Position numbers and translations under genes: made by a program. From NCBI GenBank assembly GCA_964106915.2, contig OZ066924.1: a stretch of 64,000 nt of DNA, one strand, 5' to 3'. Positions 50,101 to 56,100 of the stretch are shown here, piece by piece; the first letter of the stretch is position 1; the number at the start of each line of letters is the position of its first letter. The notes beneath the pieces are model-generated. The model ran no database searches. It had not been told where the DNA came from and worked only from the letters and a program-made list of their open reading frames with translations. This stretch comes from Podarcis gaigeae (Eukaryota).

Positions 50101-53100
50101 CAGCAGTGTTGCTTTAGGGTCTCTTCTATAATTCTTTGAAAGCTACAAATGTTTTTAAGCCAGCAAGCATGATAATTTAATGTCTGCAATATGTTGGCTC
50201 TATTTAGAGGTCAGATAAAGTGAACTTTGTTTTCTTTTGTCTTGTGTTGGTCAAAATAAACTTTTTGCAGGCACAGTGGTATTGCTGGCTAAGAATACAT
50301 AAGCATAGGAAGTAAGGCTCTGTTTAAGTTCTTGTTAGCGTAGAGTGAGTGTGCTTGTGTACATACAGCTGTGGAATGAACTCTTAGCATTATGCTTTCA
50401 ATATTTGAATAATTGCTTATGTTATTTTTTAAAAGTATAACTATTCTAGAAGCAAGCTTTCTCAAAAAGCTTTTTTTTAAAAAAAAAAAACCAAAGCTTG
50501 AATATTAATATACATAGAATTTTTCTTCCTGGTTTTTAAAACACTACTTAAATTTACACAATACCATTGGCTTTTAAATTCTGAAATAATCACAGATAAC
50601 TTTGCTTGATTGCCCTGAGTTCAGTTTATTTATTCATCTTTACCAAACAACAGAAAGAACGTCAGACATCACATTTGGTTATATGCAACCTGTAAAGATT
50701 TGGCAAAAAAAGGAAAACGTGGATAGAAAATTGCACAACTATTTTGAACACGATCTTGATGCCATTTCAACTGTGCCAATTAATTTCATGATCTGACTTC
50801 AAAAGAAAATAAAGCTCCATTTTTTTGTCTGACCCAAACATTAATTAGAGTTGCCATTCTAAGTTTGATAATACTAAGTTTGATAATATTAATAGAGGAA
50901 AGCAAAGCTTTTAAAATTTTTGAATCATTTCTTCAAGACACTGAGCAGCTTAAAATGAATATGTGAAAAAGTTTGCCTCTGAAATATGTGGTTTAACTGC
51001 AAATTGCAGTAAACAAGACTTTTATAAAGATCATTGTCTATGTGCTGCAAAAAAAAAGGTATACTCTTAACTGCAGCTCTTAATGCTCGGTGTCTTAACT
51101 TGGTTGATGGAATCTAGCTGGCTTTTGGGAGTTGAATTCAGGTGGCAAGGAAGGCTTTGCTGGAAGAACCCAATTTTAAGTAGATGTATTTCATTTGCTG
51201 GTTGAATAACATCTTATGTAATCCTATTCAGTTACAAACTGAAGGGGAAGGAGAAGGTAAACACAAAACTGTTAACCATGTAGGATTTTGTTTCTTTACA
51301 GTTTTGTGCACTTAACAGTTAAATTTACAGAATTTACTCCGGATATAAAGATTCTGTAACCCATGCTGCAGAATGTGTTTCTTCAGCAAAGTGTATATGT
51401 TTATGTTTTTTATCCCTAGCTTATTAGCCCCGGTCCAAAGCCTTCTAGCAGAGACAATTTAATCCTGTCAGGGATTGCTGCCAAGACATCGGAAGGATTT
51501 TTGACCAAGGTTTTCTAAAGCTCAATGTCACACCTGCCATATTTTTGAGGGGGTTTGGTTGCATAGTCCTAGCATTTACTGTTACTTTTGTGTTTTGTCT
51601 TTTTTTTCCTTCTTGTCTTTGTCTCTCTCTTCTCTAGAATTAAGCAGTGTTCACACTAGCTTTGAAACAGTTGACTGGGTAATACTTAATTCACACCTGG
51701 AATTGAAAGCGCATGTCATACCTGTTAACTTTTTAATAACGAAATAGTGTGGACACAGCATGTCTTATTGAAGATTAACCCCTTATTTTTAGAATACAAG
51801 AAAAATAATCTGCACTTTTTTTAAAAAAAAGCTATGGTTGAAGCTAAGAGGGCACACTTGAATTCTGATTCATTTAATTTTAGGACCAGTTTTTAAGGGG
51901 TTAATCCACTTGGAGTCTTTATGCAAAAATCCACATATAGGAAAGTCTTTTAAATGGATATCCAGCCCAGATAAGCTCTCAATTTCTATAGCTGCTTCAG
52001 CATCTTCTGATGGCTTCAAGGTTGATTCGCAATGGGTACACTCTATCTCCCACTGAGGTCAATGACAAATCTCAAGCTTAATAAAGTTGGATCACCCATA
52101 ATCTTGCTTGTCAATTGTATATGGGTCTCTGGATCATTGCATCATTTTTGTTTTAAAAAAGTAGTGCTTCAAAATACAAGTGTTTTAATACCATTATTTA
52201 AATAATAATAATCCAGGACTTCAGTGATAATTAAACTGAGTCATTAACGCTATTTTCTTGCAAGTATTTTTTAGGAGAGTATAAATAGTTTTTATGAAAC
52301 AAGGCTTGTTCCCACAAGCTATATAAAGTAGAATAAACTCTCCCTATTTTGTCAGAGCTATGAACTGAACTTTAAATGTGTCAATTATCAAATCGTACTG
52401 CTGACTTTGGCCTCAGTTGACTCTTTTCCCTTAAATTTTCTCTCCTTTCACTTGATACATCTATAATCCTAATGTCTTCTTTCATTTGCTTTGAGATCTC
52501 TCACTAATGTGACTCATTTTTCACTTCACTGTATCTGTATAGCCCATAAAATTCACCATGTTAAAATGGCATAAATCCCATTGCTAAAATGTTTAAGACT
52601 TGTATATCCCACTGGTAAAATATTAATATAAGCATAAACAAATGAATTTCGTATGAGAGGAGTACAATTCAGGCATAGCATACTAAATGAAATTGAAATA
52701 ATTCTGTGCACAGCGGAAGTGTCATTTATATAAATTCTGGCTTGCATTCTTTGACCTGTTTCTCTTCATTGCTGGCTGACCTTCAAGCCAAATCTGTTAA
52801 TATCTTGGTTTACGTTCTTTTCCTAGTTTGTGTGTTCCATGAGTCTTTGATTTGCTGTTATGAGTATGTTTGCTTAAATTAGACTACATTTTAATGTCCC
52901 ATCTGCTGAATAATCCAGGCAAAGTCTGGTTGCATTCAACATTTATTTTAACAGCAATTTTGTATTGGCAGAAAATTAAAAAATATCTAGAAATACTCTT
53001 GGCTGCTCAGCAAGCAGTTACAACATATTTAGGAACAGTAGTTATAATTGACACAAAATCCTTGTTTGGAGAATAAAAATTTACCAGATGCAGTGTTGTT

Positions 53101-56100
53101 CTTTCTATCACACTGCTGTTGCTTCTGCTTTTCCTGGTTTTGATTTTTCCTCTACTTCCTTCTCTTAAGACCCCTCTTTCTTATTTTCTTCTGGTATACC
53201 CCTGGATGAAATTGGGATGGATATACACAGCATGCACCTTGGTGCAATAGGAGCCTAGAGGGTTTAAGAAATACAAAAATGTACAGGTGCTCTTGACTTG
53301 AATTTTACAAAGTATTTCACATCCCTTCAGACTCCATAAAACCAAAAAATCTGGATTGTTTCTATAAGTATAGTTTTACCTTACCTTAATGGGAGGTATC
53401 CTAGTACATCATGGGTCTTGACTGCTCAGGAAGAATTTTGACCCATTAACTAGGACTAAGTCTGAGGTAGCATGCGGCCATTTTAAGTTGTCCCAACAAA
53501 CACAGGGCACAATCCACTGGGAAGTTGTTCTGCACAAGCACCATTAAAATGGATGGGAACTTAACAGAAATGCCCATTCAGTTCAGTGGGGCCCACACAG
53601 AAGAACTTCACAATAGATTTTGCTCACAGTTTGTTGTAACTTTTGCTTCATTCAAGTGGATTTTTGTGTTCCTTCTGTCTTGTGTTTCCTGTGCTGGTGC
53701 ACTGTGTCCAACCATTCTTCCTTCAACATTTTAATTTTAGGGGAAATTTATTTTTCCAGAGGATTTTTTTTCACAAATAGATGGACATAAAAAAAATAAG
53801 ATTGAGAGCTAACCTTGTATTATGCTCTTGATTACCTTTTGTATTGGGCTCAATGACCACATACAGATTAAGGGATTATTACTGCTGAATACAAATACAT
53901 TGGAGATAGGGATTGCAATATAAATGGCACGTGTGANNNNNNNNNNNNNNNNNNNNNNNNNNNNNNNNNNNNNNNNNNNNNNNNNNNNNNNNNNNNNNNN
54001 NNNNNNNNNNNNNNNNNNNNNNNNNNNNNNNNNNNNNNNNNNNNNNNNNNNNNNNNNNNNNNNNNNNNNNNNNNNNNNNNNNNNNNNNNNNNNNNNNNNN
54101 NNNNNNNNNNNNNNNNNNNNNNNNNNNNNNNNNNNNNNNNNNNNNNNNTAGCCTTATGAGAGAGAGTAGTTCAGTTGTTCGGTTGGATGTTAAACTATGC
54201 GGAAAAACTAAATGTTGCCCATAGTAAATATGTGTATATATATCTATTATGTGTACTCATATATAAAATTAAATGACATGGGGGAAATTAATTCATCTTG
54301 GAAGATCTGTATAGAAGAACCGCTTTATGCCGTTCTTGCCAATTTGACGTCAACTTGTTTTTCTGGCCACCGAGATAGCGAAGTTGAAAGCTTGACTCGC
54401 TTGGGGAAATCGTATGTTTTGTATTGGTAATGTGTTCCATAAGGCTGCAGAGTAACTTTGCTTTAAATAACAGAATGTGTGTTTAAAGCTTTGTGTGTTA
54501 GATGTAAGACTTTTACCCTTTATTTCTTGAAGCTTATTAAGTGTAGGGAATGAAAGGTGAGAAACTATTTGGTTTGGTGACTTTGCACTCCAGCAAAGGT
54601 ACGACAGAGAAACCAAACAGATTCCCATAGCCTTTCAGTCTCTCTACTTGTTAGCTCTTTACTCCTGTATTTCTATTATAGGAAGATAATTGTATTTTCT
54701 GTATAAATGAACCAAAGTGTGCAGGAATTCAAGGGATATTAGTCTTGTATAACCTGTGCACCTTGACTTCTCAATTACTAACCTTGGCATAAAATGCTTC
54801 TGTAAATGGCAGCTCCTGGAATGTTTCATGTGGCTTGTTTCTTTTCTGTGTCTGAGCTTCCATTGAACAGTGGTGTTTTAGCTTCTCTAAGAGGCCTATT
54901 TTCTATTGGTGCTGGGATTGATTAACTTGATTTTGTATTGCCCTCAAGGCTAGAGCTAATGGTCTGCAGTCGTGTGTCATTATCATACGTATTCTTCGTG
55001 ATCTCTGTCAGAGAGTTCCCACTTGGTCTGACTTTCCAAGCTGGGTAAGTACTTCCTTTTTGTTTATTTCATTTATGAATAGTTTCCTATGAAGCATCTC
55101 TTAAGTTATTTCACAATACAATAAAACTATTGCATATATAAAAACAGTTGCAAAACTAGTACAGATACTGACTAGGACAATAATCCACTTAGTAGCCGTG
55201 TTGAAAGAGGGAAATATTCAACAGACATCAAAATGACAATAGAGATTTCTGGTACTCATTTCCTTCAAATGCTCCATACTTAATTTATTTGAAGGCATTC
55301 ATTTGTTTCAGAAGTGAGGGTATCCATAACATCAGGACAAAGCAAAACATTTTGAAACACATTTTCCTCTAAAGAACCATGATCTAAGAGCATCTGAACC
55401 AGAAGGCCTCATTCTCAATTTTTAAACAAGATTTACATACCATTTGATTGTTGCGAAACTTATAAGTGATTTACAAGAATACATTTACAAGTGATTTATC
55501 CTTTTTATGAAGAGTCCTTGACCCTCTAGATGCAGTTTATGGGACATTCAGCAAGAGGAGGGGGGAAATAGGATACCTTGGGTACCCTAAGCCTAGTCAC
55601 TTGGATTTTCACAAGAGACTCTTAGCACTGCTATATTCTCCTGTGGTTCATCATCTGTCAATCTTCAGTATGGCAGTATCTGCACTTTTTGAAGGCACTT
55701 CCAATGAACATCAGGCAGGCACCTACAGTATTGTCATTTAGGTTCCTGCTTAAAACTTATTCGTTCACCCAGGATTTCCTGGGTAAATAGCTGTATTGAT
55801 TTTGCACCTGTAATAATGATGATAATTTTATATTTTGTTCTTAATGTTGGCAGTATAGAAATGCTTGCAAGTTATTAAACAAGTTGCTTAAGCAAGCTTT
55901 CCTTTGCTTATACAACTATTGGATATAGCCAACATATTTTAAATTGCTACTGCTGTCCTTCAAGGGCAATTACAAAACAGTGCACAAAATAAGTATTAAT
56001 TTTGAAGAATTTGAGGGGAGCCGGATTCCTTTTGCATTCCTTTTATTTATGAAAATTTGCAAGGAGTCTGGGCTCTACAGAAGATGTCCTTGTAAGCTCT

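What the first reader, a model, noticed from the sequence alone, without database searches (positions are those of the whole stretch)
51467..54148. Long-range antisense duplex linking a candidate poison exon to ZFR exon 16: a possible dsRNA-based autoregulatory switch
Seen in the sequence: (1) TCACACCTGCCAT (51528-51540) pairs 12/13 with ATGGCACGTGTGA (53924-53936), which ends exactly at the N gap. (2) Nested inside that, TTGCATAGTCCTA (51559-51571) can form about 10 pairs with TAGGGATTGCAA (53907-53918). (3) The minus strand of 51481-51507 translates as VKNPSDVL, matching 6/8 residues of the ZFR exon-16 peptide VKDPPDVL, so the 3' part of the candidate poison exon is an antisense copy of exon 16. 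From my recollection of the human exon-16 nucleotide sequence, about 36 of 41 nt of 51467-51507 pair with it (bulges and G-U allowed), and AGGTT at 51508-51512 would pair with its 5' AACCT. Inference: one colinear imperfect helix of about 100 bp closes a loop of about 2.3 kb and buries both the poison-exon donor (51510) and the exon-16 acceptor. It predicts that the hidden sequence starts roughly CATTGRGCTTTAG|AT. Established: ZFR is a DZF-family dsRNA-binding zinc-finger protein that regulates splicing and A-to-I editing, and many RNA-binding proteins autoregulate through AS-NMD. The duplex could be a built-in sensor of ZFR/ILF2/ILF3/ADAR activity; several A-C mismatches resemble ADAR targets. 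I cannot verify whether this pairing has been described.
Basis: partly seen in the sequence, partly recalled or inferred. Interest (0 to 1): 0.92.

Follow-up and report, generated by a model that had tools for sequence, protein, structure and literature searches.

The report
Ancient RNA clamp in ZFR intron
Two far-apart stretches of an intron in the ZFR gene have stayed complementary from fish to marsupials by changing in step, and their pairing covers the signals needed to splice in an essential exon, which probably lets cells turn ZFR output down by making a transcript that is destroyed.

Summary
The long-range duplex is real, but it is not mainly the one proposed. Six of 16 pairs change on both sides (null 1.2-1.4, P<=1.5e-4).

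An invariant 21-nt block (51491-51511) pairs best with an invariant intronic block 53-33 nt before exon 16, not with the exon. That helix covers the candidate poison donor and overlaps both branch-point candidates. Pairing with exon 16 itself is tetrapod-only and shows no compensation.

Orthologue spacing (85+98+29 nt) equals the 212 N, so the sides are continuous; the gap was not filled. More nested helices lie in the loop and in intron 16.

Nine annotated isoforms, gar to mammals, fit exon-16 skipping into a conserved stop; only one fits the poison exon. Best reading: a structural gate on exon-16 splicing that feeds NMD. Sensing by ZFR/ILF2 is inferred only. No reads were available and no paper on this structure was found. 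The scan had not reported it on other DNA.

The parts
49328..49468 (+). ZFR exon 15 (ends in phase 1; weak donor with T at +3)
   Evidence: same +3 T in 10 orthologues
51387..51419 (+). Extra 5' part of the candidate exon if the upstream acceptor (exon start 51387) is used; also gives a stop
   Evidence: acceptor context aligned in amniotes; similar sites in frog and fish
51420..51509 (+). Candidate poison exon, 90 nt, stops at codons 3 and 10; very weak donor at 51509|51510
   Evidence: caecilian isoform P0394 ends in the same register; no reads
51466..51492 (+). H3 5' arm: possible pairing with exon 16 (+30 to +66); tetrapods only, no two-sided change
51491..51511 (+). H2 5' arm: 21 nt invariant from fish to marsupials, ends on the donor GT; pairs with the intron at -53 to -33 before exon 16 in orthologues
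51519..51540 (+). H1 5' arm: covarying anchor helix
51545..51575 (+). HD 5' arm (tetrapods)
   Evidence: covariation not shown
51644..51759 (+). HA hairpin, 51644-51658 with 51745-51759; one two-sided change in frog
51773..51906 (+). HB stem, 51773-51785 with 51894-51906; 13 bp, two wobble changes in frog
51921..51934 (+). HC 5' arm; closes a 1.7-kb variable loop
   Evidence: (two two-sided pairs)
53656..53669 (+). HC 3' arm
53692..53726 (+). HD 3' arm
53924..53936 (+). H1 3' arm, visible part
53937..54148 (+). 212 N, left unfilled. By orthologue lengths only: 85 nt of intron (rest of H1 partner, H2 partner, two branch-point candidates), the 98-nt exon 16 (about 54022-54119), 29 nt of intron 16
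54149..54158 (+). H4 5' arm (visible part), intron 16; invariant
54438..54447 (+). H4 3' arm; invariant
54776..54883 (+). Consensus branch heptamer (54776-54782) followed by a covarying hairpin (about 54785-54883) that shortens the distance to the exon-17 acceptor
54949..55044 (+). ZFR exon 17; TAG at 54951-54953 is in frame when exon 16 is skipped
   Evidence: conserved in window and 10 orthologues

Best explanation
The 3' half of ZFR intron 15 folds into a conserved nested structure. SHOWN by comparison: H1 is a covarying anchor that brings 51519-51540 to the region about 75-98 nt before exon 16; in tetrapods, inner helices (HA, HB, HC, probably HD) collapse the 2.4-kb loop. SHOWN as a prediction in all ten orthologues: H2, next to H1, pairs the invariant block 51491-51511 with the invariant block at -53 to -33, covering the candidate donor and overlapping both yUnAy-type branch candidates of exon 16. 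INFERRED: H2 is the moving part. Closed, it hinders U2 loading at exon 16, so exon 15 joins exon 17 (Gly-stop, 91 nt before the next junction, an NMD substrate) or the flanking introns stay unspliced. Open, exon 16 is included, and the poison exon is a minor side product. INFERRED, weaker (about 0.35 on its own): dsRNA-binding DZF complexes (ZFR-ILF2 or ILF3-ILF2) stabilise the closed form, giving negative feedback on ZFR mRNA.
For: H1: 153/160 cells paired, 6 of 16 pairs with two-sided change against 1.2-1.4 in a tree-based null. Fish 5' arm with tetrapod 3' arm gives -10 to -14 kcal/mol against -24 to -34 for cognate pairs. H1 probability 0.96-1.0 in full-length folds of four species and 1.0 in five shortened tetrapod folds. 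An unbiased scan ranks H4, H1, H2 and the intron-16 hairpin on top: 4 runs against a mean of 0.27, maximum 2, in 150 column shuffles. The invariant runs coincide with the H2 arms. H2 starts on the distal branch candidate and overlaps the proximal one. Nine annotated proteins end DGG*, which fits exon 15-17 joining and not read-through; the shifted-frame stop is conserved in 11/11. Donors of exons 15 and 16 are the only coding donors checked with T at +3. ILF2 knockdown raises ZFR mRNA about 2.5-fold without changing ZFR protein (10.1101/2022.06.15.495552).
Against: H2 arms are invariant, so H2 has no two-sided support in its core; shuffle p is about 0.01, and it is not favoured in frog or gar folds. 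Neither H1 nor H2 appears in the full-length MFE of Lerista or of the window's visible letters. Branch points are inferred from motifs only. Annotated isoforms are gene models, not measured rates. Cycloheximide did not raise ZFR mRNA in ZFR-knockdown cells (PMC5861047). ZFR generally favours NMD-insensitive isoforms of UCE genes. This genome's own partner letters for H2 are masked and untested.
Confidence: 0.55

Rival explanations
1. The duplex mainly silences the poison exon by hiding its donor, as at BRD2/BRD3, and so promotes productive exon 15-16 splicing; opening it gives poison-exon inclusion and NMD (closest to the first reader).
For: H2 covers all of AG|GT at 51508-51511. Acceptor 51420 and the stop at codon 10 are conserved in most amniotes. 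One caecilian RefSeq isoform fits this acceptor. Conserved complementary regions are enriched over inactive and cryptic splice sites (PMC8052449).
Against: The donor is very poor (+3 to +6 are pyrimidines in all species, CCCC in milkfish). Acceptor and frame are not fixed in frog and fish; the 93-nt frog version has no stop. One annotated isoform against nine for skipping. Invariance ends where pairing ends, so pairing alone can explain it.
Confidence: 0.22
2. The structure is real but is mainly a platform for something else, such as site-selective A-to-I editing, nuclear detention of introns 15/16 or folding that shortens the intron, with no feedback by ZFR.
For: Imperfect helices with conserved mismatches. 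Annotated read-through of intron 15 and of intron 16 in several species. ZFR binds detained introns.
Against: No editing data. The overlap with both branch candidates and the conserved skip-frame stop point to exon-16 choice.
Confidence: 0.18
3. The complementarity is chance between independently conserved splicing elements.
For: The visible duplex alone is weak. Short invariant blocks often match by chance.
Against: Tree-aware covariation P<=1.5e-4, cognate-versus-cross energies, further compensations in HA, HC and the intron-16 hairpin.
Confidence: 0.04

Closest known systems
BRD2 exon 3b / BRD3 exon 5b long-range structures (PMC10789245)
   Same: Conserved intronic complementary pair, about -30 kcal/mol, conservation ending where pairing ends, linked to unproductive splicing.
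   Different: In BRD2 the pair surrounds the poison exon and variation was too low to test compensation. Here the arms start at the candidate donor and reach the next exon's branch region, the looped segment holds no well-supported exon, covariation is significant, and the main NMD route looks like skipping of an essential exon.
Concealed branch sites, SF3B3 stem-loop (PMC11162794)
   Same: A conserved structure hides a branch site and is tied to an AS-NMD event in a splicing regulator.
   Different: SF3B3 is a local stem-loop upstream of a poison exon. Here the masking strand lies 0.3-2.9 kb upstream and the exon behind the branch site is the coding one.
Pairs of conserved complementary regions, PCCR catalogue (PMC8052449)
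   Same: Same class of long-range intronic base pairing in pre-mRNA.
   Different: PCCRs tend to avoid branch points; H2 overlaps two candidates. ZFR is not named in the text or the five held supplements; the full catalogue track is not held, so an unremarked entry is possible.
Ultraconserved AS-NMD exons of splicing regulators (SRSF3, SRSF7, TRA2B, PTBP2 and others; 10.1101/2022.06.15.495552)
   Same: That paper states that ZFR has an exon inside an ultraconserved element and that such exons are tied to AS-NMD.
   Different: It gives no mechanism for ZFR's own exon. That the masked stretch is this element is likely (length, near-invariance in amniotes) but was not checked against human sequence.

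Membership tests
ZFR (DZF-family zinc-finger RNA-binding protein) | zf-met/jaz fingers plus DZF_N and DZF_C domains, exon order and identity matching named ZFR proteins | tested here: met
   Pfam exon by exon; pigeon and gar ZFR map colinearly, with 32 residues missing at the N block
Conserved long-range intronic RNA structure (PCCR type) | Both arms conserved and complementary across vertebrates | tested here: met
Conserved long-range intronic RNA structure (PCCR type) | Compensatory substitutions beyond phylogenetic expectation | tested here: met
   H1; HA, HC; not shown for H2, H3, HD
Conserved long-range intronic RNA structure (PCCR type) | Pairing seen in cells (RIC-seq, PARIS, SHAPE) or by compensatory mutagenesis | not testable with these tools
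Poison cassette exon (51420-51509) | Premature stop or frameshift on inclusion | tested here: met
   window and amniotes; the frog proximal form has no stop
Poison cassette exon (51420-51509) | Both splice sites used in transcripts | tested here: inconclusive
   one caecilian model fits the acceptor; donor use unseen
AS-NMD by skipping of an essential exon (exon 16) | Skipping shifts frame to a stop more than 50-55 nt before a later junction | tested here: met
   98-nt exon; stop 54951-54953, 91 nt before the exon-17 end
AS-NMD by skipping of an essential exon (exon 16) | Skipped transcript exists and rises on NMD block | tested here: inconclusive
   nine annotated models fit the junction; NMD sensitivity not testable
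Concealed branch-site structure | Mapped branch adenosine lies in a stem | tested here: inconclusive
   motif-based candidates at about -53 and -30 in 10/10 orthologues; no lariat data
Autoregulatory loop | The gene's product binds the element and changes its own splicing | not testable with these tools
   only indirect: ILF2 knockdown raises ZFR mRNA
ADAR editing-complementary sequence | A-to-I sites on the arms | not testable with these tools
   no reads

The most novel reading that the evidence does not exclude
ZFR carries a dsRNA sensor as old as bony vertebrates in its own pre-mRNA. A covarying anchor positions a switch helix that locks a decoy donor onto the branch region of the ultraconserved coding exon, and DZF complexes read this helix to set ZFR output. 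Base pairing on both sides of exon 16 would then be a direct reason why this element is ultraconserved.
Probability: 0.3. Interest if true: 0.85.

Novelty: new variant of a known kind. Interest (0 to 1): 0.64.

Why it matters
Why ultraconserved exons are so constrained is a long-standing question. Here most invariant non-coding blocks around such an exon have a predicted pairing partner, one helix has clear compensatory evolution between fish and tetrapods, and the 5' arms are intronic and can be mutated without touching the protein or the exon's own signals. That gives a direct minigene or antisense-oligonucleotide test of how a dsRNA-binding splicing regulator may control its own level. ZFR affects interferon control and A-to-I editing, so a handle on its expression would be useful.

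Tried and rejected
So there is no direct evidence on junctions or editing.

Gap: not filled. No human or same-genome sequence was looked up; orthologues of other species were tested on their own letters, and only lengths and offsets are carried over. No primate or rodent locus was fetched. Unnamed Logan proteins of unknown origin (P0337, P0405-P0410) were not followed up and are not counted.

Broad duplex scans with 120-nt windows discriminated poorly. The HC value was an index slip, redone. Contig look-ups for pigeon, Anolis and Xenopus found nothing. No shark, lamprey or placental locus was obtained. Paralogues ILF3, STRBP and ZFR2 were not examined. Ni et al. 2007, Pervouchine 2012 and Thomas 2020 were not held. 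Rfam has no match on either arm.
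Full report
Gene and gap. The window holds a ZFR gene on the + strand: zinc-finger, DZF_N and DZF_C matches exon by exon, and pigeon and gar ZFR map colinearly with 32 residues missing between exon 15 (49328-49468) and exon 17 (from 54949). The only N block is 53937-54148, 212 nt. I did not fill it. In ten non-human orthologous loci (gar, eel, milkfish, snakehead, frog, Lerista, green turtle, ptarmigan, antechinus, devil) exon 16 is 98 nt. 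In the five amniotes, 85 nt separate the end of the visible helix motif from the acceptor, and 29 nt separate the exon end from the block matching 54149 onward. The sum is 212. The two sides are therefore continuous, and the block looks like an exact-length mask.

The visible observation. Both visible helices can be drawn, but together they reach only -26.3 kcal/mol, matched by 50 of 2000 shuffles and beaten by other places in the gene. The window alone proves nothing. The VKNPSDVL reading is at 51505-51482.

H1 is real. The 5' arm region is the only part of intron 15 that matches gar at a convincing level (E 4e-9), and it is present in all ten species. Of 16 pairs, six change on both sides, and 153 of 160 cells pair. 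Examples in the visible part: 51528:53936 is U-A in tetrapods and C-G in fish; 51536:53928 is G-C against A-U; 51535:53929 flips in frog; 51539:53925 becomes G-C in eel. Simulating each column independently on the species tree with the same number of changes gave 1.2-1.4 such pairs (P<=1.5e-4; branch weights were my approximations). Fish 5' arms pair with tetrapod 3' arms at only -10 to -14 kcal/mol, against -24 to -34 for cognate arms; the reverse cross is milder, -19 to -24. H1 forms with probability 0.96-1.0 in unconstrained full-length folds of eel, snakehead, frog and gar and is in the MFE of ptarmigan and antechinus across 2.5-2.9 kb, though not of Lerista.

51491-51511 is invariant in all species, and so is a 16-nt intronic run about 53-38 nt before exon 16. 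They are complementary and nested directly outside H1. In every species this pairing beats pairing with the exon (-19.9 to -23.7 against -11.9 to -14.6). It covers AG|GT of the candidate donor. It begins on a yUnAy-type adenosine at about -53 and overlaps the motif of a second at about -30; both are present in 10/10. H2 has no covariation because its core never varies. Its probability ranges from about 1.0 (ptarmigan, antechinus, Lerista in shortened folds) through 0.6-0.9 (turtle, eel, snakehead) to below 0.3 (frog, gar), so it may be the metastable part. It is possible but unproven.

A larger scaffold. The conserved 51545-51575 instead pairs with 53692-53726 (HD; -34, 0/3000 shuffles; in the MFE of ptarmigan and antechinus; cross energies give no sign of covariation). 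Nested within are HA (51644-58/51745-59, one two-sided change in frog), HB (51773-85/51894-906, two wobble changes) and HC (51921-34/53656-69, two two-sided pairs). These are fully visible in the window and are tetrapod-specific. Downstream, intron 16 has an invariant helix H4 (54149-58/54438-47) and a covarying hairpin right after a consensus branch heptamer at 54776. In an unbiased scan H4, H1, H2 and that hairpin were the four top runs; column shuffles within conservation classes gave 0.27 on average and never more than 2.

Which splicing event? The candidate exon 51420-51509 has stops at codons 3 and 10, and a caecilian RefSeq isoform ends in the same register. But its donor is very poor, and acceptor and frame vary in frog and fish. 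Nine annotated proteins (Anolis sagrei, Geotrypetes, Lepisosteus, Rhinophrynus, Ascaphus, lynx, two Bos, Suricata) end DGG*. Read-through of intron 15 gives GW or GS in all loci examined, whereas exon 15 joined to exon 17 gives Gly-stop in all eleven. These models fit exon-16 skipping; I lacked these species' own loci, so this is inference. The stop lies 91 nt before the next junction, so by the established 50-55 nt rule it is an NMD substrate. Read-through of intron 15 and of intron 16 is also annotated. Among the donors checked, only those of exons 15, 16 and the candidate exon have T at +3. All unproductive forms cluster on exon 16.

Mechanism. H1 and the inner helices bring the invariant block to the branch region of exon 16. 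Closed H2 hinders branch recognition and favours skipping or retention while also hiding the decoy donor; open H2 allows inclusion. The structure is shown by comparison; the effect on splicing is inferred (0.55). Feedback through DZF complexes is a further inference. ILF2 knockdown raises ZFR mRNA about 2.5-fold with unchanged protein (10.1101/2022.06.15.495552), but cycloheximide did not raise ZFR mRNA in knockdown cells (PMC5861047), and ZFR tends to favour NMD-insensitive isoforms elsewhere.

Relation to known systems. It works like the BRD2/BRD3 long-range structures (PMC10789245) and the SF3B3 concealed branch site (PMC11162794). It differs in pairing a donor-like block with a distant branch region, in gating a coding exon, and in sitting in a dsRNA-binding protein's own gene. 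Ten paper searches found no description of this structure, and ZFR is absent from the held text of the PCCR paper. The library is incomplete and the catalogue track may list it. Verdict: new variant of a known kind, interest 0.64.

Limits. This genome's own H2 partner is masked. Ten species is a small sample, without sharks or placentals.

Noticed in passing
window 33850-33986 (+): SNORA66 H/ACA snoRNA in ZFR intron 2. Also in the ptarmigan ZFR locus and in four copies in frog ZFR introns; none in gar, or in the Lerista locus, which covers only part of the gene. From memory the human host is RPL5, so a host-gene move is possible.
   Followed up: partly
window 51639-51679: The '41-nt hidden exon' is doubtful: acceptor lost in Lerista, donor lost in antechinus, no matching protein isoform. 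Its conserved core is the 5' arm of hairpin HA.
   Followed up: partly
window 54776-54883: Consensus branch heptamer about 170 nt before the exon-17 acceptor, followed by a hairpin conserved from fish to marsupials with several compensatory changes; the frog keeps a short hairpin but lacks the heptamer.
   Followed up: yes
window 51439-51444, 54150-54155, 54441-54446, 54946-54951: A 6-7 nt motif recurs in the candidate exon and at the start of intron 16, and its complement recurs at the H4 3' arm and across the exon-17 acceptor, so competing short pairings are possible. May be chance.
   Followed up: no
window 50209-50220 and 50823-50834: Another amniote-conserved 12-bp complementary pair, with a flanking 9-bp stem (50229-37/50802-10), in the 5' half of intron 15.
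   Followed up: partly
window 51483-51488: This hexamer has two possible partners in tetrapod orthologues, one in exon 16 and one in the intron between the H1 and H2 3' arms; the second would cross H2. Not conserved in fish.
   Followed up: partly
L006 26285-26333 and 28318-28366: The green turtle assembly shows the exon-15 peptide twice, 2 kb apart; duplication or assembly error. The pigeon protein P0151 likewise repeats exons 12-14.
   Followed up: no
P0022, P0153-P0156, P0162, P0186, P0229: Cod-like fishes, milkfish and eels have altered exon-16 peptides although the exon is nearly invariant elsewhere; gadiform loci would be a good natural test of the structure.
   Followed up: no
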